Source of the DNA: Octopus bimaculoides
Taxonomy: Eukaryota
Reading direction: 5' to 3'
Assembly (NCBI RefSeq): GCF_001194135.2
Contig: NC_068985.1
Span: 22,111,523 to 22,175,522, forward strand
Length of the DNA: 64,000 nt
In this document: one piece after another, positions 3,537 through 62,500 of the stretch
How positions within the stretch are numbered: position 1 is the first letter of the stretch
Layout: each line of letters opens with the position of its first letter
The notes under the pieces: model-generated
Seen by the model: only the letters and a program-made list of their open reading frames with translations
Database searches by the model: none
What the model was told of the DNA's origin: nothing
Program-made: the position numbers and the translations under genes

Positions 3537-3747
3537 CTTTTATAAGTAATATTCTAAAAGAATATATAACTGAACTTATATTGAGTGCTCAATCGTATAT
3601 TGAGTACGATCGTAAGATATTTAACTCCTTAAATTTTAGGTTCTTTTATATTTTATATTTTAGACTTTACAATATTCATGCTTAATTACGCATAAATTTT
3701 TATACGCATTTATATTCACACGTATATATATATATCTNNNNNNNNNN

Positions 3748-4077: not shown

Positions 4078-4527
4078 CATCATCATCATCATCATCGTTT
4101 AACGTCTGCTTTCCATGCTAGCATGGGTTGGACGATTTGACTGAGGACTGTTGAAACCAGATGGCTACACCAGGCGCCAATCTGATTTGGCAGAGTTTCT
4201 ACAGCTGGATGCCCTTCCTAACGCCAACCACTCTGAGAATGTAGTGGGTGCTTTTACGTGCCACCGGCACGAAGGCCAGTCAGGCAGTACTGGCAACGGC
4301 CATGCTCAAAATGGTGTATTTTACGTGCCACCTGCACGAGAGCCAGTCCAGTGGCACTGGCAACGATCTTGCTTGAAAGTCTTTACACGTGCCACCAGCA
4401 CATGTGCCAGAAAGGCGATGCTGGGCACAGGTGCCATCACGATTTTGCTTTCGCTTGCCCCAAGAGGTCTTCGCAAGCCAAGTTTTGTGTCCAATGAAGG
4501 AGACGACGTTGGCATGGGTGCCAGTTG
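4078..4527 (-). mobile_element. Young RTE-tailed SINE-like retroposon (my family X) with (ATG)n tail and internal tandem hairpin units
   Basis: (CAT)n followed by cgtttaacgtctgctttccatgctagcatggg, near-identical to copies at 14592, 22421, 39665 and 60310. Flanked by the 7-bp direct repeat TCAAATT (4071-4077 and 4528-4534). Confidence 0.85.
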
Positions 4528-4659
4528 TCAAATTAAGTTCAATTTCGATAATAAATTAGGCCTGGTGACAATTAAATCTTCAGATTAGAATCACCTAACA
4601 AATAATATAAAATATAAAAGTGCTAGAGCTTGAAGTTTTAGAAAATATAAAAACGTTGT

Positions 4660-8852: not shown

Positions 8853-9828
8853 NNNNNNNNNNNNNNNNNNNNNNNNNNNNNNNNNNNNNNNNNNNNNNNN
8901 NNNNNNNNATATTATATATATATAGTCAATACCAGGTAATTACTGATAACTAAGAACTGATTTGGCTACATAGAGAAAATCTCATAAATAGTGGCATGTA
9001 TGAAGAAGGGCATTCAGCTGTAGAAACCCTACCAAAGTAGACAATGGAGCATGATGTAGTCCTTGGACCCATCAGATCCTATCAAACCATCCATCATATG
9101 CCAGCATGAAACATGGGTGTTAAATGATGATGGTGATGATCTGGACTGCAAAGTCTCTAAAATGGATTTAAAGAATGCAACCAAAAATATCTTAATCTTC
9201 AGAAACTTGTAATGCTCAACAGAAACATAGTTAATTCTTAACTTATTAGCAGTTAACCAAGCAGTATTACCAGGAAGTTAAGAATTTTTCTATTCTCATG
9301 TGTGTATATAAATATATATGTATATGTATATATATGATGGGCTTCTTTCAGTTTCCAACAATCAAATCCACTCACAAGGCTTTGGTCAACCCAAAGACAC
9401 CTACTCAAAGTGCCACGTAGTGAGACTAAACATAGAAACATGTGGTTGGGGAGCAGGCTTCCTACCGCACAGCCATACCTGCACCTATATATTTACATAA
9501 TATTTCATTCGGTCAGTTGTGTATATTCAGGATGAATTATGAATAATAGACTACAATGTATTTCACATTGAATTATTTACAAATATATGGAATTAATATT
9601 AGAAAACATTTGATTTTTTACTGAAATGCTCAAAAACCTCCTTTAATAACTTCTTGAGTCTCCAGAAAAAATCCGATATTGTAAAACCATACGTTCACTG
9701 TTTTATAATTACTGTTTAGTAAATCATTCCAACTCAAAATACCTATGTTCTATCGTTTTAATTTTAAGGCTGTACCTGATTAAACTGTTGTTGACTTTAA
9801 GATCAAAATAAAATACAAAAGTACAAAC

Positions 9829-9926: not shown

Positions 9927-10074
9927 CTGAAATATTTAGGAAGGGAATTGTTATATGCAAAATAAAACAAGATGTATTTTAAAAATAGATGTTTGTAAAA
10001 TAAAAATGAATTAAAATTTTTGGATGTGCGACTGAAATACCATTTCAACAAAGAAGCTTAGTTTACTGTATTTT

Positions 10075-10435
10075 TCACTTTTTACTTGTTTCAGTCACTG
10101 GACTGTAGCAATGCTGGGCCACAACCTTGAAGGGTTTAGTTAAATATATCAACCCCAATACTTACTTTTTAAAACTAGGTACTTATTTTATTGGTTTCTT
10201 TTGCCAAACTGTTGTCAAGCAGGCGGGGAAGAGATAAACACAAACACACACACACACACAAGTATACAACAAGCTTTCACACAGTTTCCATCTATCAAAT
10301 TCACTATTCACTCACAGGGAATTGGTTGGCCTTGCCCACAATACCACACAGCAGGGCTGAACTAGAAACCACATGGCTACAGAGCTTCTTAATCTCACAG
10401 CCAAGCTTGTGCTATAGCCATGCATGCAGCTACAG
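10075..10435 (-). mobile_element. Composite tRNA-derived SINE: head Y, (GT)n linker, tail W
   Basis: The head has a tRNA B-box-like gttc motif, and the tail ends gactgaaacaagtaaaa. The same layout occurs at 17365-17755 and 33115-33842. Confidence 0.7.
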
Positions 10436-11436: not shown

Positions 11437-12722
11437 CAGGCTGAGTAAAAAGGAACGTTTTGAAACATGAAATTCATCAAAATATATTTCAACAATGCAG
11501 AAATTTTATACATCAAAGTAAGTACCATTACAATCAACATATTTTTGTCAACAAGTTACAAGTTTGTTTATTCTGGTAACATAAAAAAAAAAATCTGGTG
11601 TTCTGGAGCTGATGAACTCTTTGAATGCACTTTCAGCATTGGTTTGATTTTTGAACTCCTTCTCTTACAGGAAACTATCAAGGTGCTTGAAAAAGTGGTA
11701 GTCAGTAGGAGTAAAGTCTGGGGAATAAGTTGGATGGAGAAGAACTTTGTAGCCAAGTTCCCTCAGCTTCTGGAGTGTCGTTAGTGAAACGTGTGGTCAA
11801 GCATTATCATGAAGAATAATTGGCTCTCTTCAGTTGACCAGTCTGGGATGGAGGAGTAACAGTTTTTTGCTCATTTTGGTAATTTCATGGCAATATGTTT
11901 CTGCAGTAATGGTTTCTGCAGGTTTTAAGAAGTTATAGTGAATGAGTCCAACAGTACACCACCAAGCAGTTACCATAACCTTCTTTTTGAAGAGCTCGGA
12001 TTTAGGGAAAGTTTTTGGTGTTTCATTTTGGTCCAACCACTGCGAAGAATGTTTTTTATTATTGTGCAGAATCCACTTCTCATCACAAGTTACAATATGG
12101 TTGAGAAATGGGTCGGTCTGGTTATAGAGAAGAAGCAACAAGCAAATTTCATATCTACACATTTTCTGATTTTCATTCAAATTGTGTGGTACCCATTTGT
12201 CGAGCTTTTTTGATTTTCCAATCGCATGCAAATGGTTGCAGGCAGTTTTCTGGCTAACTTGAAGTTCTTTGCTAGTTCTTGAGTGGTTTTACATGGCTCT
12301 TTCTCAATGATGATCTTTCACTGACTGTCATCGATGTCAGATGGGTGTCCACTATGTTCACAATCTTCAAGGTTTGGGTCTCCACTGTGAAATCGTTTAA
12401 ACCATTTTCAAGCTGACCACTCACTGGTCAGTTCCTCACCAAACGTTTCATTGATATCGCAAGCAGTTCCAGCTGCTTTTATGTCCTTTTTTGAAGTTGA
12501 ATAGCAAAATTGCTTGAATATCATGCTTTAACAGTTCCATTTCAGATGATTGTAACAATGGTGAAAAAAATATCAATGTTAATTTATTGATGCATTTGAG
12601 CAAGTTTATGTCTGTATTATCAGATAATTGCAAAAAAATGTCTAAAAAAATTCAAAACTCTGCAACAATCCAGTACAAATTCTTCATGATTCAAAACGTT
12701 GCTTATTTTTTATTCAGCTTGG
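11437..12722 (-). mobile_element. Mariner (Tc1/mariner) transposon, near full length, transposase disrupted
   Basis: Motifs WVPHNL, IVTCDEKWIL, KKVMVTAWW, ILHDNA* and HPTYSPDFTPTDYHF. Imperfect TIRs caggctgagtaaaaaggaacgttttgaaacatga and (rc) ccaagctgaataaaaaataagcaacgttttgaatcatga, with TA at 12723-24. Confidence 0.92.
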
Positions 12723-16996: not shown

Positions 16997-17364
16997 GGTA
17001 AGGGAGAGAGCTGGAGATAAAGAGAGAAAAATCAAAAAAAGAATTGTGGTCTGTGCAAATGCTAAGGACAGGTGGTAAACAAGAAAAAAACAAGTGGAAT
17101 AACTAAATATTTTACCATAAACTAAAATGCAATGATAAAAATAAATGGAAAAATATGGAGATCATAATTTTCCTGATTACTAATCTAATATTTAGAGTGT
17201 ATATTTATACTAACATATTGTACATATATACCAGTGGCTTTCTTGGTTAAACTCAAGTTAAAAAATAATGAGTTGTATTTCAAATCCAGTCTGAGCCATA
17301 TCCAGGAATAAGACACTTAGTGTCTATCAGAGAATGAACCAAGTAAAACAGCACAGATACAGTC

Positions 17365-17755
17365 GTTTTATTTTTTTGCTTGTTTCAGACACTGGACTGC
17401 AGTCATGCTGGAGCACTCCTTGAAGGTCTTAGTCAATCAAATGATCTCAGTACTTCTTTTAAGTTTGATACTTTTTCTCTATCAGTCTCTTATTGTTAAA
17501 CTGCTAAGTTACAATGACACAAAACACAATGACTATCAAATGGTCAGAGGTAAATTCAAAGGCACACACACACACACACATACACACACACACACAATGG
17601 GTTTCTACACAATTCCAACTATCAAATTCTCTCATAAGACAATGGTGAGCCTGGAGGCTTATAGAAAACATTTGCCCAAGATGCTGTGTAGTGGGACTGA
17701 ACCCAATGCCACATAGTTGCAAAGCAAACTTCTTAACCATATGACCATGCATAGA
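17365..17755 (-). mobile_element. Composite SINE: head Y, (GT)n, tail W
   Basis: Same modules as 10075-10435. Confidence 0.7.
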
Positions 17756-21121: not shown

Positions 21122-21998
21122 AGAAGGTTGAAGAGGAACACACAAGTTGATATGTATAAGGTAAATAAGACAAGGTAGGAAATGCTAAAATAATTTGATC
21201 ATGAAAACCCTTTTAGTACTGGTTTCAGTCATTGAGACTTTTTCAACTTAGAGTAAAGTATGAAAAACATTAAATTGTGGAAAAATTAAATGAAAAGATT
21301 TTTAAGAAAAATATTTCCATAGTATTCAAATACAAGGGGCATTTTCCTTGTTTCTACCTGTCTCTATTTCTCTCTTTTTTTACTCTTGTGGGTTCGATAT
21401 ATATATATGTGTGTCTGTGTGTGTACGTATGTCTTGTGTGTGTATTTGTTACCAGCATACTCTCACCATTTGACAACCAATGTTGGTTTGTTTATGGCCC
21501 CATAAATTAGTGGTTTGACAAAAAGAGACTGATAGAATAAGTATCACATTTTAAAAAAGCATAAGTTGATTTGTTGAACTAAATCCTTCAAGGCAGTGCT
21601 CCAGTATGGCCACAGTCCAATGATTGAAACAAGTCAGAGGTAAAAGAAAGAATTGATTTATTCAGCTCTCCATCGTAACTTAGCTACTGGTCTACCTCTT
21701 CATTAACATCATCTTCAGTGTTTGTTGTTTTCAAAACCTATATACTCAGTCCTTTATTCTAAGGACTTCTAACTTTCACCTTTCTCATATGCTCCAGAAA
21801 TAACTAGTCTTCAAACTTTCAAATTGTGTAGTAATCATATCTATTTAAGCCATTCTTTCTATGCTTCTTATGCAAGAGAAGAGAGCCTCAGGTGTTATCT
21901 GCTGCATTATTCTTCTACAGTCATAATGATAACAAAAATTACAACAATTATAGTTAGTTCTGCTGATGTACGAATGTAAAACAAGACATTTATCTTAC

Positions 21999-33003: not shown

Positions 33004-33357
33004 ATGGGACAGAATTGTAAACAGCATGGAGACAAACATTTTGTAAGTCGATTTTAATACCTTTGAAGACATAAGAGCTTATTGGAGAGAGAGAGAATAG
33101 TATATTTCTTTCAAGTCAATCTTTTATTTTTTACTTGTTTCAGTCATTGGACTCCAACCATGCTGTGGGACACCACCTTAAAGGGCTTTAGTCAAACTAA
33201 TCAACCATCAACCACAGTACTTTATTTTTTTAAATCTGGTACTTATTCTATCATTCTATTTTGCAGAACTGTTAAGTTATAGGGACATAAATAAACCAAC
33301 ACCAATCATCAAGCAGTGGGGAGACAGACACAAATACAACAACATGCATGCATACAC

Positions 33358-35534: not shown

Positions 35535-35766
35535 TCATCATCATTCACTTAACATCCACTTTTTCATACTTGCTTGGATCAAGCAGATTTTAGTGAGGCA
35601 GATTTTCTATGGCCAGTTGTCTTTCCTGTCACTAACAATCACATGTTTCCAAGCAAGGTGATATTTCCACATTGCTGGACATGTTTCCATGGAATATTGG
35701 AAACAAAGGACACTGCTTGTATAACAATGATGCTCATTTACAACTATTCCATAATGTCAAGACAAG

Positions 35767-35799
<33 letters not shown>

Positions 35800-35930
35800 T
35801 GGGCTTCTCACAGTTTCTGTCAATGAAATCCACTCACAAGGTTTTGGCTGGCCTGGGTCTATAGTAGAACACACAAGCCCAAGATGCCTTCCAGTGGGAC
35901 TGAACCCCAAACCATATGGTTGGGGAAAAA
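35535..35930 (-). mobile_element. Composite SINE: head Y, (GT)n, tail U
   Basis: The same layout recurs at 38735-39115, 39145-39598, 42590-42952 and 62015-62650. Confidence 0.7.
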
Positions 35931-38698: not shown

Positions 38699-39434
38699 GT
38701 TATCATGAAAACTTTGATAATATCATTATCCTCATCATTGTTGTTTCATCATCATTTTCAACTTATTGAGGCAGATTGTCTATGGCTGAATGCTCTTCCT
38801 GTTGCTAAGCAAGGTAATATTTCCTTTAATCTTCTGAACAATGAACAGTAGATTGTAAACAAATGGAACTGTTTGTATAGATGGTGACTTTGTTTTTACA
38901 TAGTGCACAAATAATGTCAAGACAAGTCAACACACACACTGAGCTTCTTACAGTTCGTCTACCAATTCCACTTATAAGGCACTAGTCATCTTAAAACCAT
39001 AGTAGCAAGTATAAAGCCATAATAGAAGATATTTACCCGTAGTACCATGCAGTGGGAATGAACCCTAGACTACATGGTTATGAAGCATACTTCTTAATCA
39101 CACAACAATACTTGTGCCTATATAAAGTATAAAGTTGTAATGCCACATCATCATTACTATCATTTTAACATCCACTTTTCCATGCTGACATGGGTTGGTC
39201 AGAATTTGTTCAAATGGATTTTCTACAGTGGATGCCCTCCCTCTTGCCAACTCTCACCCATTTCCAAGTAGGATAATATTTCCCCTTGACCAGACTTGTT
39301 TCCACAGAGTATTGGAAATGAATGACACTGCTTGTATGAATGATGGTGATATTCATTTACAACAATCATGTGATACCAAGACAAGGAGATATAGATACAC
39401 ACACTCACATACATACAGATATGTACATGTCATG

Positions 39435-39487
<53 letters not shown>

Positions 39488-39664
39488 ATGATGGGCTTAT
39501 ATACATATATGATAGTAGAAAACACTTTCTCAAGGTGCCACAGAGTGGGACTGAACCCAGAATCATGTGGTTGGGAAGCAAACTTCTTGCCTGCACCTAT
39601 TCATCAACCATGCACCACTAACATCAAATTTACTTCTTTGAAAATTTGGATACATTATATAGAT

Positions 39665-42388: not shown

Positions 42389-45300
42389 ATAACTATTAAT
42401 GAGGTATTGTTTTCCATACTTTTATGCCTTTCTTATTGCTAACTCTTACCTGTTTTTCAAGTAAGGGATCTCTTATTCTCTACATTTTGAAAGCTGCAAC
42501 ATCAGTTAATGATTTGTAAACGGGGGGGGGGGGGATCAACGTCATTGTTTGTAGTTCAGCAATTTTTAGAGGAGTGCACATGTAAACAAATACACAGACA
42601 CACATATACATCACTTTTCTGTGGTTGCATGGGTCAGAAAGAATTTGATAAGGCAGATTTTCTACAAACGGACGCCCTTCCTGTTGCCACCTATTTCCGC
42701 TTGTATGATGATGATCCTCATTTACAACCCTCATGCAATGTCTAGATGAGGGCACACATACATACACACACACACACACAACACACATACTGGGCTTCTT
42801 TCAGTTTCCATCTATCAAATCCATTCACAAGTCTTTGGTCAGCCTGAGACTGAAGTAGAAGACACTTGCACAAGGTGCCTCACAATGGGACTGAACTCAA
42901 GATCATATGGTTGGGGAGCAAACATTTTAACCACACAGCCACACCTGTGCCAATGCATGTTACTTATATAACAACTATATTTCACTGAAATTCACAAGCT
43001 TCAGAAATATATCCATCATTCATTGTCTCATTTTTGATTTGGTAATGTTTGCATGCTGCTCAATGAATATATCTACCTATTTGGTCAGGTCTGTATATTT
43101 ATTCTCATTTGGTCCACACTGTATAGCTGTACAAAATGTAGCCAATTGTCTTGTAGTATCTGTTATATTTCCTAGATTTACTATGTTAATTAATAACATT
43201 TTTACATATAGTTTCTTGTGGGTAAGCACTGGTTTTAAACAACAACAATATATTAAATATTGTTTCTTCTTTTTGAGAAACCTTCAAACTTATTCTGGTT
43301 TCTTTGTAAAGTCATTACTATCATATCTAGCTTTAGTACATACTAGACTACCCATGACCCATTGGGTCACTGATAGTTCAGGTTATACAACATTGAAGCT
43401 GATTTCAACATTGCATTGAAATGAAAGTTAATTTTATGATGATTCAGTTAAATATTTCAATTCATTTGTGTCTTCATAAGTCTGGTTTACAAGTTCATGT
43501 TTAAGGTTTTATTGATTATTTACAGCATCTACTAGAAATAGAACTTCTGGGATAAACTTGAACTCCAGTAACAGCATTTATTTATGGCATATATGCACAC
43601 TTCTACAAAAATACAAAAGGAATTGTTATATTATGTAAACATAAAATTAATAGAAACAATTTTCACAGTATTATATATTCCCATTTCAGAGTTATGTTAT
43701 TTTTGGAGTATTTTCCCATTATGTGCAGTTTTGGCTATTTTTGAAGGTAGCTCCCAAAAATTGCATATCTCAGGAATCCATGATCCAATTTACGCAAAGC
43801 TTGTTTTATTCTGTTTGTATTCACATTTCAGGGGTTACTTACTTTCAGAGTATTTTCCCATTATGTGCTGGTTTGGCTGTATTAAATTACAGGCAAGCAC
43901 ACATGCAAACAAGCAAGCAATCATAGAGTTTTAGTAGTATATAGATTGACTATGATGGAATTTATTTTATCATTCTTATGTGGCCATATCATAGCTTTTC
44001 TTTTATGGCTTTCCTTTAATTAGCTTTTTTGGATGAAATGTTAGGGGAAGGGGTTCTATCTAAAACTCACTCAATACTCCAAGCCCTGTGTTATAACTAA
44101 TAATTTCCTTATCAATAAAAATAACAGAAAATATTCTGTTGCTTTTTTATTCATATGCATTATTCCTGTTATTTTATTATTACTTCAGAGATGTAATTGC
44201 CTGGCAAGTGATTTGATCTGAGACTGTGTGTTGAAACTAATATAATTACAGCATGGAAGACACATATGAGACATTCAAAAGCACACAAAAAATCTTTAAC
44301 TTCACTTAAACATTTATTATTTGGTGTTGAAAAGTTTTGTCACAATAAGTGTGATATGATCCCTGACAGGGTTCTACTGCAACTGGAACTCTTGTAGTGA
44401 CTGGTTTGCAGCTGATGTAACAAAAATTCTGACACCAAATAAGATGTAGTTAATATTTTGGGTGCTTTTGAATGGCTAATATGTGTCTTCTGTGCTGTAA
44501 TTGGTTCATTGTCGTTGTCATCATTCCACTGCTGCCACGGTTGTCATCACTATTATTATCATTTAAAAGTCACAAAATATGAAAGAGAAATTGAATATAT
44601 TTAATAACCAAATGGGAGTAGAAACAAACAAATATATTTCTGTCTCATAAAATGCTTTTTATTTATTTTTATATGAAAGTAATATTTGTGATCAAATTAC
44701 TATGAACCACTGGTTACTGAAACCACTAGTGAATAAAAACCATTTGAAGGGTGGGGATCGTAAAATCTAAAAAAAAAGAAAAATAATAAATGAAATATCT
44801 GCTACTGAAAACATTGTTCAGTTTAAATGTTCATATTGTGATACATCTGGTGACTTATTAGAGTTGAATTTTTATTTTTCCTTTCCCTTTAAAAATACAA
44901 AATTGGAAATGGTTGGAAATTTAGATGACAAAACAAAACTAGTTGAAACCCAATTACTCTTAAACTACTTCAACTGATACATGAAGAATGCAAGGAATGT
45001 TTAGAGATTTGCAACCTCAGTGGCACAAACGTTAGCAAAAGTCAAGTATAGTATATACATATAGCTTTCAATAAAAAAAAATTCTAAATATATTTTCAAA
45101 ATACAGTGGTAGAGATTACAAATGATGAAAGGCAAGTCGACAATTTTTTTTTATGAGGGAAAATAAATTTGGAATGAATGATAACTGCACTTATCTACAA
45201 ACATACATACATACATACACACATACACACATAATGACAATTTATTATATGTAAGTGTGTAACTCCAAAGCTAGTTGAATAACAACTAAAAAGGAAAATA

Positions 45301-45736
45301 ATACAAAACTAAAAATATATTTTTATCTCAATATTCTGCATCATTTAATAATTATAAAAATCTCATTAAATTCTTTTGAAGAATTTCAGCAACCTAAATG
45401 CTGAATTAATGTAATGAACCAGGTGTTAAAAAATCTGTTACTAATAATATAACATTCCAACAGCTATATAGCTGCAGTTGGGGCATAGAACTTAATGTTA
45501 TGCAACAATAACTGGTTGAGATAGGAACTGAGTACAATGTTATAGCATAGCGGTGCTCCAGCATGGCCGCAGTCAAATGACTGAAACAAATAAAAGAATA
45601 AAAGACTACAAATAAACTTAAAAAAACAATCACTGTGATATTCAGATATACCTTTAATTAATTAATAAAAGTAATTGACTTCGTTTTTGGATTTGGTTTG
45701 CAAGATTCTTTATGTGAGTTTGTGTGTTGAAGCATA

Positions 45737-46082
45737 TTTTGTTGTGTCTGGGGAGAGTCATTCTCTTTTAGTGCCTTATTATTTAACACACTCACTGGTA
45801 AAGTTTCCACTCATTTACTTATTTATTTTTCCTAGAATTTTCATTGTGTCTTGCAACCTTTTTAATAGTCGTTGACTCTGTCTGTTATCCGAGATGCATT
45901 CTTTTTGTTCATTTGTGCGCATGTGTGTGAGACAGCGTGTGTGCACATACACATGTATGTATGTATGTATGTATGCATGTAAGTGTATGTATGTGTGTGT
46001 GTGCATACGTATATAAGTATGTATATGTGTACATTTGTATGTAAGTATTCTGTGTTTGTGTGTTCGTATTTGTGTGTTTTTA

Positions 46083-46130
<48 letters not shown>

Positions 46131-47549
46131 GGTTTTTGCGACTATGTACTGTCTGTATGTATGGATGTGTGTCTCCATGCATGTCCTTGTGTGAAGTGTG
46201 TGTGTATATGGTCACATGTTTCAGTCTTCATTTGCATATGTATGTGTGTATGTGTGCTTGTCTGTTCATATCACATATGTACCTATCTGTCTGTATGTCT
46301 ATCTGTTTACATTTATATCCATTTACCTACACAGATGTGCACATACATATACATATACATACACACACACACACACACATATACATACATCTACATAACA
46401 GCCCACTAACTATTCTACCTGTATATAAATATAAACTGTGGGTATGGGGGTAGGATTACCTACTACATATATTTCCTATTTAGTACTGGGGATGTTTCAT
46501 TAATGAGCATGTACTCCTGTATTTGTCTGAGTGTTGACTCCTTTGGGTGCTTGGATAAAATGCAGATATTACGTTGACCCAGGCTGTGAATGTCAAGTTG
46601 ACCCAGGTTGCCTCCATGTTGGTCTAAGTTGACCCAGGTTGCTTCCATGTTGGTCCGGACCAACACGGAGGCAACCTGGGTCAACTTGACATCTGCATTT
46701 TATCCAAGCACCAAAGGACCCAACACCCAGAGAAATACAGGAGTACGTCATCATAAATGAAACATTCCCAGTACTAAATATGTAGTAGGTAATCATACCC
46801 CCATACCCATAGTTTATATTTATATACAGGTAGAATAGTTAGTGGGCTGTTATGTAGATGTATGTATATGTGTGTGTGTATGTATGTATATGTGTATGTA
46901 TGTGCACATGTATGTAGGTAAATGGATATGATGTAAACAGATAGACATACAGACGTACAGGTACATAGGTAATATGAACAGACAAGCACACATACACACA
47001 TACATATGCAAATGAAGACTGAAACATGTGACCATATACACACACACTTCACTTTACACAAGGACACATATGGAGACACATATCCATACATACAGATACA
47101 GTACATAGTCATGAAAAGCCATACACAGACACACTCAGACATGCGCGCGCACACACGCACACACACACACACACATAAAAATACGCAAAGACGAACACAC
47201 AAACACATGAATATGCATAAAACATACATACAAACATACACACATACAAACATACACACATACACACACATACATGCATACACACACTTGCATGGATACA
47301 TACATACATATATACATATGTGCATACATGTGACCCACACACACACATGCACACACAGTGACCCACACACGTGTGCACAAACAAAAAGAATGCAGCTCAG
47401 ATAATGGACAGAGTTAATGACTATTGGAAAGGTTGCAAAACACAATGAAAATTTTAAGAAAATAAATAAGTAAATGAGTGAAAACTTTACCAGTGAATGT
47501 GTTAAATAATAAGGCACTGAAAGGGAATGGCTCTCCCCAGACAACAAAA
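45737..47549. repeat. ~1.8 kb foldback palindrome with diverged, microsatellite-rich arms and no spacer
   Basis: Centre gttggtcc|ggaccaac at 46656/46657. The arms are colinear in reverse complement, so the track ORFs on opposite strands share SGESHSL.VPYYLTHSLVKF.LIYLFIF and MCVYGHMFQSSFAYVCVYVCLSVHITYVP. Confidence 0.95.
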
Positions 47550-47650
47550 GTAATTGAAATACACCTTTAATTAATCAAATAAAAATAATTGGAAGTTATT
47601 ATTACATTTTGTTATCTTATTGCTAATTAGAAAAGGCTGGATATTTCTTA

Positions 47651-47830
47651 AAAATTTAGTTGTACAAGAGGCTGCTGAAAAGTTCCAGGCTTTGAGGGCA
47701 TCACAAAAGACCTGGTCGGAGGCCCAACTTTCCAGCTTCCACTGCAATAAGTGTGTGAATCTGAAAGGAGAATATGTTGAATAAAAGTCATAATAAACTG
47801 ATCCTCTTGTATTTTCTTTTACCCAATACA
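47651..47830 (+). mobile_element. Mariner-derived MITE fragment
   Basis: tacaagaggctgctgaaaagttccaggc TIR-like start and the transposase C-terminal remnant NKCVNLKGEYVE*; the right TIR is missing. Confidence 0.6.
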
Positions 47831-49129
47831 CTTACTTATATACACATGAAGGCATACACAATTTTTCATTAAAACCCTACGCTATTTGTCATTATTTATC
47901 TTGTAGACAAAATAGCTTAAATTCTGCAGGACAGATCTTTTTCAGTTCTGTCAGTTATTAATTAACCCATCATTTAAAAAAAAGGAATTTATTTTAAAGA
48001 TGATACGTCTTAAAATGTCAATTGAGCAGTAGCCACAACATTACTTTCGTTTCCAACTCTTTATAATGTCATAATAACAATCTATCTACTACACAAGGAC
48101 AGCTATTCAGTACACTTGAAGTTTTTGTTGGTATCAGACAAGTGATCTATTCATCAAATATATGCATTGATAATAGTATTGTACCAGAATTAATGGACAA
48201 TTTAGTGCAAGCATAGATGGTAAATAGTCTTTTTTACTATAGGCACAAAGCTTGAATTTTGTAGGGTGATGCTAGTTGATTACATCCAGCCCAGTGATCA
48301 ACTGGTACTTATTCTATTGCTCCTAAAATGATAAAAGGCAAAGTTGACCTCAACAGAATTTGAACTCAGAACATAAAGCCAGAAGAAATACTACTAAACG
48401 TTTTGTCTGGTGTGCTAACAATTCTGCCAATAATGATGACTGAGTCTCAATGCCTGTGAATCAGCATGAAAACAGAATAAAAACAGAAAATAATCAGTAA
48501 CATCATCAACTAGGAATAATTATTTTCCTTGTACAATAAAAATGAAAGAGTTAATCTTGATGATCATATATTTTGATGATTGTTTAAATTATAAAATTAT
48601 AAAAACAGCAGAAAGATCTTGACTGCAGCTTTCTTGGATAAAATGAACCTTGAATGTAGAATGTAAAGTGATTATCACATTCGAGACAGGAACCCAATAA
48701 TTATAGTCTTTAAAACAGAAGGTGGAATACCTTAAATATGTTATTAATTATTCACAGGATGCTATTTTAATGCTTACTAATTAAATATGTTAATGCATAT
48801 TAATTAAAGAACTTAATCTAGTGATTACTTTAAGTAATGTTAAGAGTAAATGCTTATCTGACAATGTATGCAGAGGTCATGGCCATGGCACATAGAATAG
48901 AAAGGGATTGAAACTCTGAGATGTAACCATTTGCAATACTAACTCAAAACACTGGCCTGCCACCTAATCAGCTACCACTCAAGTGAACACACAAACTAAA
49001 TAGATATCATGCTCATCAAGAAACAGAATAGACAGTTGGTTGTGAATATCAAGGTTTTACCTCAGTGAAGCATGTGCCTCTCAACATAAATTAGTAATTA
49101 GTGTCTTCAGAGTAAGAGATAGAGAGACC

Positions 49130-52769: not shown

Positions 52770-53146
52770 ATTGTTTTTGCACAGCTTCTAACGCTGGCGA
52801 TGTACTACAGTGTCAGTTGTTCACTATCAGTGAACTATGGTCACGTCACACCCCTTATTTTTCGAGCACCATCCGGAGTATTCAAGCGGTTCCAAGCAGT
52901 GCTGTTTTCTGCAAGTGCTCCACCCTTATTGCAGCCCCTATTTGTTCCATGTACTTCTCAAGATTTTTACTCACTGTTCCCAGGGCTCCAACAATTATTG
53001 GTACTACTTACCACCTTTTTCAGCGACCACAACTGCTTAACCTCCCAAGCTAACCTGTCATACCTATCGACTTGTCTTTCTTCCTTATCACATACCTTGT
53101 TGTCAGCTGGGCATGCTATATCTATGATCCAGCATTGTTTGTTTTC
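52770..53146 (-). mobile_element. 5'-truncated R4/Dong-type non-LTR retrotransposon (restriction-like endonuclease C-terminus)
   Basis: ENKQCWIIDIACPADNKVCDKEERQVDRYDRLAWEVKQLWSLKK, then after a frameshift VVPIIVGALGTVSKNLEKYMEQIG..LQKTALLGTA*ILRMVLEK*. Flanked by (TAA)n on both sides. Confidence 0.78.
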
Positions 53147-53185
<39 letters not shown>

Positions 53186-53193
53186 CATTATTA

Positions 53194-53239
<46 letters not shown>

Positions 53240-53247
53240 CATTATTA

Positions 53248-53302
<55 letters not shown>

Positions 53303-53315
53303 CATTATTATTATT
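53147..53315. repeat. Long (ATT)n microsatellite with ATC interruptions
   Basis: Read directly; it is the source of the poly-I and poly-Y track ORFs. Confidence 0.97.
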
Positions 53316-53694
53316 TTATTATCACTTGAAACTTGCTCCAAATATGAGTCTATGTTTGCATGTATTAGGCAAGTCTGTAGTATGACATATCCCCTCTCAT
53401 CTCAGCCATGCTTTATTTTGTTTGAGAGACTCAGTGTCTTGAGATAAGACTTTTTATGTCTTGCTAGGGTTTTCTAGTGACACAAACACCTTTTATTATC
53501 AGTACTCATCATGCATATCAGCACAGCCATCTCTTTCCAGCTTATATCTTTAATTACTAGCGATGTTTTTGCCCTCCACCTATTATACAAGTTTACATTA
53601 CACAGCCATCAGAGTCATTTCCCCAACCTCTACATGTCTGTCATTCTAAGTCAATAAAGCTTTATCCTGTAGCCATGCTCCAGATAGTCTGTCA

Positions 53695-57639: not shown

Positions 57640-58074
57640 TATATATACATACAGTCATATATATATACATACATACATACATACATACATACATACATAC
57701 ACACATGCATGCATGCACANNNNNNNNNNNNNNNNNNNNNNNNNNNNNNNNNNNNNNNNNNNNNNNNNNNNNNNNNNNNNNNNNNNNNNNNNNNNNNNNN
57801 NNNNNNNNNNNNNNNNNNNNNNNNNNNNNNNNNNNNNNNNNNNNNNNNNNNNNNNNNNNNNNNNNNNNNNNNNNNNNNNNNNNNNNNNNNNNNNNNNNNN
57901 NNNNNNNNNNNNNNNNNNNNNNNNNNNNNNNNNNNNNNNNNNNNNNNNNNNNNNNNNNNNNNNNNNNNNNNNNNNNNNNNNNNNNNNNNNNNNNNNNNNN
58001 NNNNNNNNNNNNNNNNNNNNNNNNNNNNNNNNNNNNNNNNNNNNNNNNNNNNNNNNNNNNNNNNNNNNNNNNNN

Positions 58075-58232: not shown

Positions 58233-58910
58233 TTGTTACAAAAACATTAAAAAAAACTTCAATGAAATGCTATAAATGGTGGTTAACTTGCTCTGAAGCT
58301 ATAAAGAACTATGAATTAGGCCATCAAAATTATCTTACAAAAAACTGAGAGCAAAGACAAAGTCTCAAACTAATATGGCAGCCACTTTGTTTAGTAATCA
58401 CTTTATATGTCCATGCATGTCTTTGTGTCTGTGTTTAACCCACCACCACTGCTTGACAACCGGTGTTGGTGTGTTTATGTCCCCATAGATTAGTGGTTTG
58501 GCAGAAGTGGCAAATAGAATAAGTACCATGTTTTATAAAAAGTCCTGGGGTCAATTTGTTCAACTAAAAATCTTTCAAGTCAATGCCCCGGCATGGCCAC
58601 AGTCAAGAATGACTAAAACAAACAAAAGATAAAAAATAAATAAAAGATATTAAATCCTCATACATTGAAATTGATGAGAGAATCCCACTATTATTATATT
58701 TTTTTCTTTAAATTTTCTTCCATTTCTCACCGAGTGTTTTCCGTACACCTAGGGCAGAGAAGCTCATTGTACGCATTCCCAGTTTGCACACGCAAATTCA
58801 CAGGTAAAATATGTATTTGGAAAAATTAATTAATAAATAAATTCATGAAAGGATGTTGTTTTCACAGCGATAATGCTCTTCTCAGTACATGAGTCGCTTT
58901 TAAAAATTTT

Positions 58911-61039: not shown

Positions 61040-61970
61040 TTTATTTCCCACTGATCACCCCTTCCTGTGCCTCCAAGTATCTCTCCTTCTCTGAGCTACA
61101 TTTTAGGTTTGCAATACCTCATCTCTAATACTCTCTCATCTCTGCTATCATTCTCAACACCTTCTAATATTTGCTGTTGATGCTCCATCCCACCTNNNNN
61201 NNNNNCCGCCACTCCTGCACATCTCCAATAGCCATCTCTCCCTCTTCCCAGCCCTCCCACTCTGTACATCATCTCCCCATTTTCTGATCTATCTACAGGT
61301 TTATTATACTGCCACTCCCCACCTTTTTCTGTACTACCACTTATCACCTCCCCCTCGAGCCAATGCTATTTCTTTCACCTTGTTGCCCACACTGCTATTT
61401 ACCATTGACCACACTTTTGTTCATTATTCACCACATACGCCTCTACTCACTCTTTAACCATCTATCACTCTTCTTTCACACTTGTGTGAACTTACCCACC
61501 CACCCTTCCTGATCCACTGTCTCTAGTCTCTTTTATACTCGCTTTCTTGTACCTTGAGATTATTCTCTGATACCTTGTCATCATCTGCTTTATCTTCTTT
61601 CCAGTAACTCCCTTATATTATGTGGAGTAGCTATGTATCTCCTCTGTACCTGTGCCTGTCCTTCCATCATACCTTAGCCTCTCAAAACCTAGCATGACAC
61701 CGCCTCCCTCTCAGCTACAACTCCACTCAGTCAACAAGGTTTTTTTTTTTTTTATCTTGTGAGTTACTTGGTTACCTCATTAGTGTTGTCATGCAAAAAG
61801 CACCCAGTACATTCTGTAAAGTGCTTGGCATTGAAAAGACTAGCTGCAGTAGAAACCATGCCGAAACAGACACTAGAGTTTGACACAGCCCTCCAACTTG
61901 TTAGATCCTGTCAAACCATCCAACCCATACCACCATAGAAGACATATGTTAAATGATGATGATGATGAGA
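61040..61970 (+). mobile_element. Pyrimidine-rich RTE-tailed element
   Basis: Reverse-complement homologue of 7590-8800; ends gttaaatgatgatgatgatg. Confidence 0.65.
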
Positions 61971-62271
61971 TAAATGTATGTGTGTGTGTGTGTAAGAGAG
62001 AGAGTGAGGGAGAGAGATCATTTTAAAGTCCACTTTTCCATGTTTGCATGGTGCAGATGAAGTTCATTGAATCACATTTTCTACAACTGGATGTTCTTCC
62101 TGTCGCCAACCTTCACCTGTTTTCACACAAGACAATATTTCCCTGTGGCTGGACATGTTTTCACAAAAGGTTCAAAAAGAATGAGTCTTCTTGTATGATG
62201 GTGACACTCATTTGCAACTATTTCACAATATTGAGGGAACGCACATGCATATTCATCATACATGTTTCTTT

Positions 62272-62500
62272 TAGTTTCTTATTTCTTTGCTGCCCACAAG
62301 GGGCTAAACATAGAGGGGACAAACGAGGGATTAAGTCGATTACATTGACCCCAGTGCATAACTGGTACTTAATTTATCGACCCCGAAAGGATGAAAGGCA
62401 AAGTCGACCTCGGCGGAATTTGAACTCAGAACATAGCGGCAGATGAAATACTGCTAAGCATTTCGCTCGGTGTGCTAACGTTTCCGCCAGCTCACCGCCT
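62272..62500 (-). mobile_element. Young, full-length-looking family Z tRNA-derived SINE
   Basis: (rc) ggcggtgagctggcggaaacgttagcac..gagttcaaattccgccgaggtcgac with A- and B-box-like motifs and intact CpGs. Older copies lie near 890-1090, 6635-6780, 12910-13050, 27960-28080, 48230-48430 and 52200-52380. Confidence 0.85.

What the first reader, a model, noticed from the sequence alone, without database searches (positions are those of the whole stretch)
45646..47591. ~1.8 kb zero-spacer foldback palindrome with old, diverged arms, bracketed by a ~30-bp direct repeat
Seen: arms 45737-46656 and 46657-47549 are reverse complements meeting at a perfect centre (gttggtcc|ggaccaac). They differ by many substitutions and microsatellite length changes, so a simple assembly mirror is unlikely. 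Near the apex the left arm has extra copies of a ~30-bp unit (aagttgacccaggttgcctccatgttggtc twice, plus a partial acgttgacccagg), while the right arm has one. Outside, ata(t/c)acctttaattaat..aaaa(g/a)taattg occurs in direct orientation at 45646-45677 and 47559-47591. Established: long spacerless palindromes form cruciforms, are unstable, and can arise from hairpin-capped ends, foldback transposons or inverted Penelope pseudo-LTRs. Inference: either a member of an undescribed foldback or hairpin-intermediate mobile family whose GC-rich apex is the resolution site, or a one-off fold-back repair event. If transcribed it would give a ~900-bp dsRNA.
Basis: partly seen in the sequence, partly recalled or inferred. 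Interest (0 to 1): 0.75.

Follow-up and report, generated by a model that had tools for sequence, protein, structure and literature searches.

The report
Head-to-head dimer of a truncated retroposon
The 1.8-kb palindrome is real in the assembly, but it is two inverted, equally truncated copies of a very abundant interspersed repeat sitting between one target-site duplication, so it is most likely a one-off by-product of a single retroposon insertion and not a new kind of foldback mobile element.

Summary
Arms 45737-46656 and 46657-47549 are reverse complements meeting at GTTGGTCC|GGACCAAC. They show 8.8% substitutions (K2P 0.094) and 20 indels.

The interpretation changes. Every sampled part of the arms belongs to an interspersed repeat present in thousands to tens of thousands of copies in this species and three relatives. 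Ordinary copies run straight through the "apex" (...GTTGGTCC-TTGGCATGTTGGTAGAG...), so the apex is a shared truncation point, not a family-specific resolution site.

The left copy runs 58 bp further out, to the family's sharp terminus at 45679. The whole 1,871-bp unit (45679-47549) is flanked by an exact 8-bp duplication, GTAATTGA (12 bp counting an AAAA microhomology). Both outer junctions are present in a sister species.

Best reading: one retroposition event in which the nascent copy turned back on itself. This is the head-to-head arrangement described for Penelope-like elements.

Caveat: the exact centre is held by only one public run, from the reference sample, so long reads are still needed. 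Interest is low to moderate.

The parts
45640..45673 (+). Target-site unit 1, a 34-nt AT-rich single-copy sequence.
   Evidence: It aligns 29/35 with 47553-47587. It has single-copy depth in species B, C and D. In the reconstructed empty site the two units are adjacent in tandem.
45671..45678 (+). Left copy of the exact 8-bp target-site duplication GTAATTGA. It is preceded by AAAA, giving 12 identical bases with the right junction.
   Evidence: Read directly from the sequence. The repeat finder family D12 also reports it.
45679..45736 (-). Outermost 58 nt of the repeat family, present only in the left copy. It is taken to be the element's 3' terminus; the element's sense strand here is inferred to be '-'.
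   Evidence: Word depth jumps from about 2e2 to 2e5 at 45678-45680, and many contigs start at 45680-45690. The depth here equals that of the adjacent arm. The family consensus continues past the right arm end as CAACAAAATAT..., matching this left-copy sequence. It has no similarity to the rest of the arms.
45737..46656 (-). Left arm: a copy of the abundant interspersed repeat, truncated at 46656.
   Evidence: Arm alignment. The outer part, middle and inner part are all high copy in species A, B, C and D (species C sampled for the outer part only).
46566..46655 (+). Left-arm-only tandem amplification of the 31-bp unit AAGTTGACCCAGGTTGCCTCCATGTTGGTCT. There are two full units (46595-46655) and a partial, diverged third (46566-46586).
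   Evidence: TRF, the repeat finder families D6 and D7, and a 23-25-nt plus 31-nt gap in the right arm. In the DNA fold the second unit forms the hairpin loop.
46648..46665 (.). Centre: an 18-bp perfect palindrome TGTTGGTCC|GGACCAACA, with the symmetry axis between 46656 and 46657.
   Evidence: Read directly from the sequence. It is spanned exactly by one X2 contig, 46627-46693, and by no other indexed run.
46657..47549 (+). Right arm: an inverted copy of 45737-46656, truncated at the same family position. It stops 58 nt short of the family terminus.
   Evidence: A 249-nt contig of species D crosses the arm end into the flank, 47521-47721.
47550..47557 (+). Right copy of the 8-bp target-site duplication GTAATTGA. 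The arm's last four bases, AAAA, give 4-nt microhomology with the target.
   Evidence: Read directly from the sequence.
47553..47587 (+).
   Evidence: It has single-copy depth.

Best explanation
The palindrome is a single insertion of an abundant retroposon-like interspersed repeat that ended up as a head-to-head dimer.

Inferred sequence of events:
1. Copying of the element began at its 3' terminus, now at 45679, on one side of a staggered target cut.
2. Copying proceeded about 980 nt inward and stopped at ...GGACCAAC. This is a 5' truncation inside a short-repeat region of the element.
3. The new strand then turned back and used itself as template, either by snap-back self-priming or by a template switch of the reverse transcriptase. 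This produced the inverted second arm with no spacer.
4. The return copy stopped 58 nt before the terminus. It was joined to the other target end through a 4-nt AAAA microhomology.
5. Gap repair left an 8-bp target-site duplication, GTAATTGA.

The target was an AT-rich 34/35-bp tandem repeat, which now appears as a ~38-bp bracketing direct repeat.

Since then the arms have accumulated about 9% substitutions, microsatellite length changes and a left-arm-only amplification of a 31-bp unit next to the centre. That amplification breaks the symmetry and may help the palindrome persist.

What is shown: the arm homology, the high-copy linear family, the shared truncation point, the sharp outer terminus, the 8-bp flanking duplication and the conservation of both outer junctions in a sister species.

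What is inferred: the RNA intermediate, the orientation (outer end = 3' end) and the snap-back step.

No function is implied. It is a fossil of a transposition accident.
For: - High-copy family: all four sampled parts of the arms are high copy in species A, B and D (species C was sampled only for the outer part). Word depths: outer 45678-45930, 5e3 to 6.6e5 against about 14 for single copy; right outer 47423-47542, 3e4 to 7e5; middle 46149-46330, 8e3 to 1.6e5; inner 46395-46625 and 46657-46780, 4e3 to 1.3e5.
- The family sequence continues into what looks like microsatellite at 46331.
- Linear copies: family copies read through the apex. Loose-end consensus after 46624/46625 and before 46657/46658 gives GTTGGTC[C/T]TTGGCATGTTGGTAGAGTATGGAGGACTGT in all species.
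- Copy number is highest at the outer end and falls inward over 45680-45930. This is what a 5'-truncating retroposon with its 3' end outside would give.
- The family boundary is sharp at 45678-45680.
- An exact GTAATTGA abuts both ends of 45679-47549. AAAA microhomology lies at the right junction. The reconstructed empty site gives a clean tandem of two 34/35-nt units.
- Single-copy contigs of species B, C and D cross the left flank-to-element junction. A species D contig crosses the right arm-to-flank junction. The structure therefore predates their split, in line with K2P 0.094 between the arms.
- The arm differences checked against the family consensus, including the two mismatches nearest the centre, are each private to one arm. 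This fits divergence after a single event.
Against: - No coding sequence, reverse transcriptase, endonuclease, tRNA-like head, poly(A) or hammerhead ribozyme was found in or next to the arms. The retroposon nature and class of the family therefore rest on copy-number profile and end structure only.
- The depth profile is not monotonic. The low-complexity middle attracts unrelated contigs.
- No other palindromic copy of the family was demonstrated.
- A true intramolecular snap-back needs a small loop. The zero spacer requires either that the central CCGG was the loop or that a template switch occurred without a loop.
- The centre-specific words occur in only one run worldwide.
- An 8-bp TSD is also typical of hAT and P-type DNA transposons.
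- The empty site could not be checked in an outgroup.
Confidence: 0.5

Rival explanations
1. Post-insertional DNA-level inverted duplication. An ordinary 5'-truncated copy (45679-46656) inserted first. Later a replication template switch or fold-back repair of a break at its inner end copied 45737-46656 in reverse, next to it.
For: Spacerless inverted duplications are the classic product of fold-back or template-switch repair (established knowledge). The right arm is a shorter copy of the left. The apex lies in a short-tandem-repeat region prone to slippage. No other palindromic family copies were seen.
Against: The new arm would have had to land exactly between the element's truncated end and the right TSD copy, leaving GTAATTGA flush against both ends. 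The AAAA microhomology at the right junction matches the target sequence upstream of the left TSD copy. It does not match what would have preceded GTAATTGA in a single-copy insertion (...GGTCC).
Confidence: 0.22
2. The two inverted arms are real, but the exact zero-spacer centre is a gap-closure or assembly shortcut. The true locus would have more family sequence or another spacer between the arms.
For: Centre-specific 31-mers are held only by run X2, which is from the reference sample. They are absent from two sister runs of that sample and from all other indexed runs of the species at 40-55x coverage. Variable N gaps in the window suggest a scaffolded short-read assembly. Single-copy contigs share the exact 31-mer 46626-46656 but continue as family sequence, TTGGTATGTTGG.... 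The literature warns that such structures are mis-assembled (PMC8557442).
Against: The X2 contig (depth 45.7) matches 46627-46693 exactly and carries the two arm-specific mismatches at +-10 and +-14. It is therefore not an in-vitro fold-back of a single molecule. Exact-match coverage by Logan contigs is patchy everywhere in this repeat; for example 46720-46741 is uncovered in all four runs. Palindrome centres are known to drop out of amplified short-read libraries (established knowledge).
Confidence: 0.18
3. A member of a genuine foldback or hairpin-intermediate mobile family.
For: Long inverted arms with internal short tandem repeats near the centre, flanked by a duplication of the target.
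Against: About 1e3 or more family contigs per genome read linearly through the apex. The two ends of the unit are not symmetrical, because the left has 58 extra nt. The 'opposite strand' joints are explained by alignment switching between the arms.
Confidence: 0.05
4. Two independent insertions of the same family in opposite orientation that happen to abut.
For: The family is very abundant, and the arm-arm identity of 91% is not obviously higher than expected between two contemporaneous copies.
Against: Both copies are truncated at the same base with no spacer. A single 8-bp duplication flanks the pair, with no internal TSDs.
Confidence: 0.03

Closest known systems
Penelope-like element (PLE) insertions with an adjacent inverted 5'-truncated copy (inverted pseudo-LTR arrangement)
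   Same: Both have a head-to-head arrangement with 3' ends outside, a palindrome at the inverted junction, heavy 5' truncation, a short (8-10 bp) TSD, microhomology at a junction and unequal outer ends. [quoted passage not shown]
   Different: No RT or GIY-YIG coding sequence, pseudo-LTR tandem or hammerhead ribozyme could be linked to this family. The outer asymmetry is 58 nt and is part of most family copies, unlike the optional 30-40-bp 'tail'. Here both arms are the same about 900 bp, with no full-length unit between them.
L1/LINE 5' inversions by twin priming
   Same: Both are insertion-coupled inversions bounded by one TSD, with microhomology at the junctions.
   Different: Twin priming joins two different, adjacent segments of the element, so it does not make a palindrome. 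Here the two arms are the same segment meeting at a symmetry axis.
Foldback (FB) transposons
   Same: Both have long inverted arms with short tandem repeats, flanked by a target duplication.
   Different: In FB families every copy is an inverted repeat. Here ordinary copies are linear through the apex and only this locus is palindromic.
Spacerless inverted duplications from fold-back or template-switch DNA repair
   Same: Both have a zero-spacer junction and a second arm shorter than the first.
   Different: Those events are not expected to be bracketed flush by a target-site duplication.

Membership tests
Foldback (FB-type) transposon family | Family members are themselves long terminal inverted repeats, so the palindromic layout recurs at many loci. 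| tested here: not met
   Family contigs in four species continue linearly past the apex into TTGGCATGTTGGTAGAG.... No symmetric 'skip' joints were listed. The opposite-strand joints are alignment switches between the arms.
Foldback (FB-type) transposon family | The two termini of the unit are inverted copies of each other. | tested here: not met
   The left end has 58 nt (45679-45736) that are absent from the right end and unrelated to it.
Penelope-like elements | An ORF with a PLE-type reverse transcriptase and a GIY-YIG endonuclease. | not testable with these tools
   The arms hold no such ORF. The host genome could not be searched. A protein search with the two open frames at the apex found nothing.
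Penelope-like elements | A hammerhead ribozyme in the pseudo-LTR (canonical clades; Naiad and Chlamys lack it). | tested here: not met
   Rfam scan of 44500-48800 at E<=5 gave no hammerhead, only sub-threshold hairpin and microsatellite hits.
Penelope-like elements | An inverted 5'-truncated copy adjacent head-to-head, with a palindrome at the junction. | tested here: met
.
Penelope-like elements | A short TSD around the whole complex unit. | tested here: met
   GTAATTGA at 45671-45678 and 47550-47557. The empty site was not verified in a relative.
Non-LTR retroposon (LINE/SINE) inserted by target-primed reverse transcription | A fixed 3' end with variable 5' truncation, so copy number falls from the 3' end inward. 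| tested here: inconclusive
   There is a sharp boundary at 45678-45680, and depth falls about 100-fold over 45680-45930. However the middle and inner parts rise again, partly because of low-complexity recruitment.
Non-LTR retroposon (LINE/SINE) inserted by target-primed reverse transcription | A poly(A) or simple-repeat 3' tail, or a tRNA/5S/7SL-derived head for SINEs. | tested here: not met
   The terminus reads ...CCAAATCCAAAAACGAAG with no tail. No tRNA-like sequence occurs in the window.
L1-type twin-priming inversion | The inverted and direct segments are different, contiguous parts of the element. | tested here: not met
   The two arms align to each other over their whole length.
hAT-like DNA transposon (8-bp TSD) | Short terminal inverted repeats at both ends of the inserted unit. 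| tested here: not met
   The left end is CTTCGTTTTTGG.... The reverse complement of the right end is TTTTGTTGTCTGG.... They show no terminal similarity.
Assembly mirror artefact | Near-identical arms with no reads across the centre or the outer junctions. | tested here: not met
   The arms differ at 74 substitutions and 20 indels. Both outer junctions are present in other species. The centre is spanned by one X2 contig, though by no other run.

The most novel reading that the evidence does not exclude
The family might not be a Penelope-like element. It could be an unclassified, very abundant retroposon of this lineage that regularly produces spacerless head-to-head dimers by self-primed reverse transcription. 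This locus would then be one fixed, conserved example. Such dimers would be a widespread and systematically under-assembled source of long hairpin (dsRNA-capable) loci in these genomes.
Probability: 0.1. Interest if true: 0.5.

Novelty: new member of a known kind. Interest (0 to 1): 0.25.

Why it matters
The main value is as a worked example. A striking 'ancient spacerless palindrome' resolves into a known type of transposition by-product once copy number, family read-through at the apex and the target-site duplication are checked.

It also flags a practical point. The centre of such dimers is almost invisible to short-read data, with only one run holding it. Head-to-head retroposon dimers may therefore be under-counted in short-read assemblies of repeat-rich invertebrate genomes.

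If a census showed that this family makes such dimers often, it would bear on how the responsible reverse transcriptase primes second-strand synthesis. That question is still open for Penelope-like elements.

Tried and rejected
The region was therefore sampled in five pieces.
2. The 'opposite strand' joints looked at first like other palindromic copies. Mapping the coordinates showed that each joint lands on the mirrored position +-9 nt at known arm-specific indels. They are alignment switches between the arms.
3. A scan of metagenome contigs with a conserved 20-mer of the family returned one bacterial contig with a chance match. No host-derived family copy was obtained, so no family consensus could be built.
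4. A protein search with the two frames that stay open for about 43 codons across the apex found no homologue.
5. Rfam and tRNA scans gave nothing above threshold. The mir-like hits are the apex hairpin and TG/TATG repeats.
6. A search for PacBio runs found none that are served. Raw Illumina runs are sampled at only about 0.7x, which is too thin to judge the centre.
7. A long (38-39 bp) TSD was considered. It was rejected in favour of an 8-bp TSD inside a pre-existing tandem repeat. Only the second reading explains the exact 12-mer AAAAGTAATTGA at both junctions while the rest of the repeat is just 83-85% identical.
8. The 58-nt left-only terminus was compared with the rest of the arms on both strands. 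Scores of 18-19 fall within the shuffle range, which reaches 22.
9. The organism names are coded. An octopod origin is suspected from composition, repeat content and run dates, but it was not verified and nothing in the verdict depends on it.

Full report
**Observation**

- A local alignment of 45600-46656 against the reverse complement of 46657-47640 gives arms 45737-46656 and 46657-47549, with 767 matches, 75 mismatches and 96 gap columns.
- A global alignment gives 769 matches, 54 transitions and 20 transversions (p = 0.088, K2P = 0.094) and 20 indel events of 1-25 nt.
- The arms meet at GTTGGTCC|GGACCAAC. The perfect palindrome is 18 bp (46648-46665), with the first mismatches at +-10 and +-14.
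- The left arm has two 31-bp units at 46595-46655 (TRF, 96% matches) plus a diverged partial unit at 46566-46586. The right arm has one unit.
- As single-stranded DNA the apex folds at -68 kcal/mol (z = -13). The right-arm unit pairs with the first left unit and the second left unit forms the loop.
- The flanking direct repeat is real and longer than reported: 45640-45677 versus 47553-47591, 39 nt at 84.6%. It is well beyond chance. Its score is 26, the maximum in 2,000 shuffles was 22, and none of 2,919 real pairs at the same spacing reached it.

**What the arms are made of**

Contigs of public runs from the window's species (A) and three relatives (B, C, D) were laid on five pieces of the region. 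Every piece is a high-copy interspersed repeat. Single-copy word depth is about 14 in X1 and 40-56 in the other runs.

| Part of the arm | Coordinates | Word depth |
|---|---|---|
| Outer left | 45678-45930 | 5e3 to 6.6e5 |
| Outer right | 47423-47542 | 3e4 to 7e5 |
| Middle | 46149-46330 | 8e3 to 1.6e5 (about 1,500 contigs) |
| Inner | 46395-46625 and 46657-46780 | 4e3 to 1.3e5 |

- The family sequence continues into the apparent microsatellite at 46331. The TG/TATG-rich stretches therefore belong to the element and are not later expansions alone.
- No other copy lies in the 64-kb window.
- The family has a sharp outer boundary at 45678-45680, where depth jumps a thousand-fold. This is 58 nt outside the palindromic arm.
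- On the right, family copies continue past the arm end as CAACAAAATAT..., matching the left copy. The right arm is therefore a shorter copy of the left.

**The apex is not special to a foldback family**

In all species and at all stringencies, family contigs that reach 46624/46625 from the left, or 46657/46658 from the right, continue as GTTGGTC[C/T]TTGGCATGTTGGTAGAGTATGGAGGACTGT.
- Ordinary copies are therefore linear through the point where this locus turns back.
- Both arms are truncated at the same base of the family.
- The 'opposite strand' joints fall on mirrored coordinates offset by the known arm-specific indels. Examples are 46536 with 46712 and 46472 with 46773. They are alignment switches between the two diverged arms, not other palindromes.

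**The flanks**

GTAATTGA occurs exactly at 45671-45678, flush against the family terminus. It occurs again at 47550-47557, flush against the end of the right arm.
- With the preceding AAAA, the identical stretch is 12 nt. On the right this AAAA is also the family's own sequence, which gives a 4-nt microhomology.
- Removing 45679-47557 puts the two 34/35-nt units (45640-45673 and 47553-47587, 29/35 identical) in direct tandem.
- The simplest reading is that an AT-rich tandem repeat was the target and the insertion made an 8-bp target-site duplication.
- A 38-bp TSD is less likely. It would not explain an exact 12-mer at both junctions within a repeat that is otherwise only 83-85% identical.
- Either way, the whole palindrome lies between one duplication of the target.

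**Age and reality**

*Outer junctions*
- Single-copy contigs of B, C and D run from the left flank about 20 nt into the element.
- A 249-nt contig of D crosses from the last 29 nt of the right arm into the right flank.
- Both junctions therefore predate the A-D split, in line with the 9% arm divergence.

*The centre is less secure*
- One 70-nt contig of X2 (the reference sample) matches 46627-46693 exactly.
- X2 is the only indexed public run holding the centre-specific words.
- Two sister runs of the same sample, three other individuals and species B and D show no spanning contig.
- The X2 contig carries the two arm-specific mismatches, so it is not an in-vitro fold-back of one molecule.
- Exact contig coverage is patchy throughout this repeat.
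- Amplified libraries are known to lose palindrome centres.
- I consider the centre probably real (about 0.8), but unconfirmed by independent data.

**Mechanism**

The combination points to one insertion event:
- a linear abundant family;
- a sharp outer terminus with copy number falling inward;
- identical truncation of both arms with no spacer;
- one short TSD around the pair;
- microhomology at the junction of the shorter arm.

In such an event the nascent copy turned back on itself, through snap-back self-priming or a template switch of the reverse transcriptase. This is inference, because no RNA intermediate or enzyme was seen.

The arrangement is the one described for Penelope-like elements:
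- an inverted 5'-truncated copy adjacent head-to-head;
- palindromes at the inverted junction, read as self-priming;
- 8-10-bp TSDs and microhomology-mediated junctions;
- unequal ends;
- assembly difficulties (PMC8557442; PMC3846280).

Membership in that family could not be tested.
- No coding sequence is linked to the arms.
- No hammerhead ribozyme is present.
- No full-length family copy could be fetched.

The main rival is a later DNA-level fold-back or template-switch duplication of an ordinary truncated copy. It is disfavoured because the second arm would have had to land exactly between the truncated end and the TSD. The AAAA microhomology also fits the target, not that junction.

**Function**

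None is indicated. A 6% sample of one RNA run gave 105 reads on the mid-arm, in both directions, none at 95% identity or above. The family is transcribed, but this locus is not shown to be. The left-arm-only 31-bp amplification next to the centre makes the hairpin tip asymmetric. That may have helped the palindrome survive, but this is speculation.

**Verdict**

- The 'new foldback or hairpin-intermediate family' interpretation is not supported.
- 'One-off' is supported, but the structure most likely formed during insertion and not by later repair.
- It is a new member of a known kind of structure and is of low to moderate interest.
- The open item is long-read confirmation of the centre.

Noticed in passing
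window 45542-45609 (also 10060-10122, 17361-17416, 21593-21647, 33120-33165, 58584-58644): The 3' part of a hyper-abundant SINE-like repeat...GCGGTGCTCCAGCATGGCCGCAGTCAAATGACTGAAAC + A-rich tail. Word depth is about 1e7 in all four species, and at least five more partial copies lie in the window. Its tail often lies 20-70 nt from the outer end of the palindrome's family at other loci. This is probably chance adjacency, given the copy numbers.
   Followed up: partly
window 47663-47707 and 47738-47797: Two further high-copy repeats lie just right of the palindrome, with word depth 1e5 to 1.4e6 in species A, B and D. Only about 95 nt of single-copy sequence (about 47553-47647) separates the palindrome from them.
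   Followed up: no
window 11830-12231 (-): Remnant of a mariner-type transposase (Pfam Transposase_1, E = 1e-23).
   Followed up: partly
window 4151-4588, 17405-17716, 35574-35864, 39195-39491, 62048-62446: ORF translations share a motif (...LP.AN.H.FP...FP...TCFH...) followed by (CA)n/(TG)n, read as THTHTH. This probably represents bodies of one repeated element with an attached dinucleotide repeat.
   Followed up: no
window 3738-3747, 8853-8908, 57720-58074, 61196-61205: N gaps of 10, 56, 355 and 10 bases. Their variable sizes suggest a scaffolded short-read assembly, which bears on how far the palindrome centre can be trusted.
   Followed up: no
window 52967-53341: A long (ATT/ATA)n-type simple repeat giving poly-isoleucine ORFs on both strands.
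   Followed up: no
window 47617: Species D carries a 13-nt insertion (TAGTTTACATTCA) in the right flank relative to the window.
   Followed up: no
window 46626-46656: The exact 31-mer of the second left-arm unit, including its T variant, also occurs in single-copy contigs that continue as ordinary family sequence: TTGGTATGTTGGACTGTTTGTACATGGAGG... and TTTGACATGTTGGTAGAG.... It is unresolved whether these are other loci of a subfamily or an alternative true continuation of this locus.
   Followed up: partly
L001 3574-3593: The only metagenome hit to a conserved 20-mer of the family is a bacterial contig with no other similarity, a chance match.
   Followed up: yes
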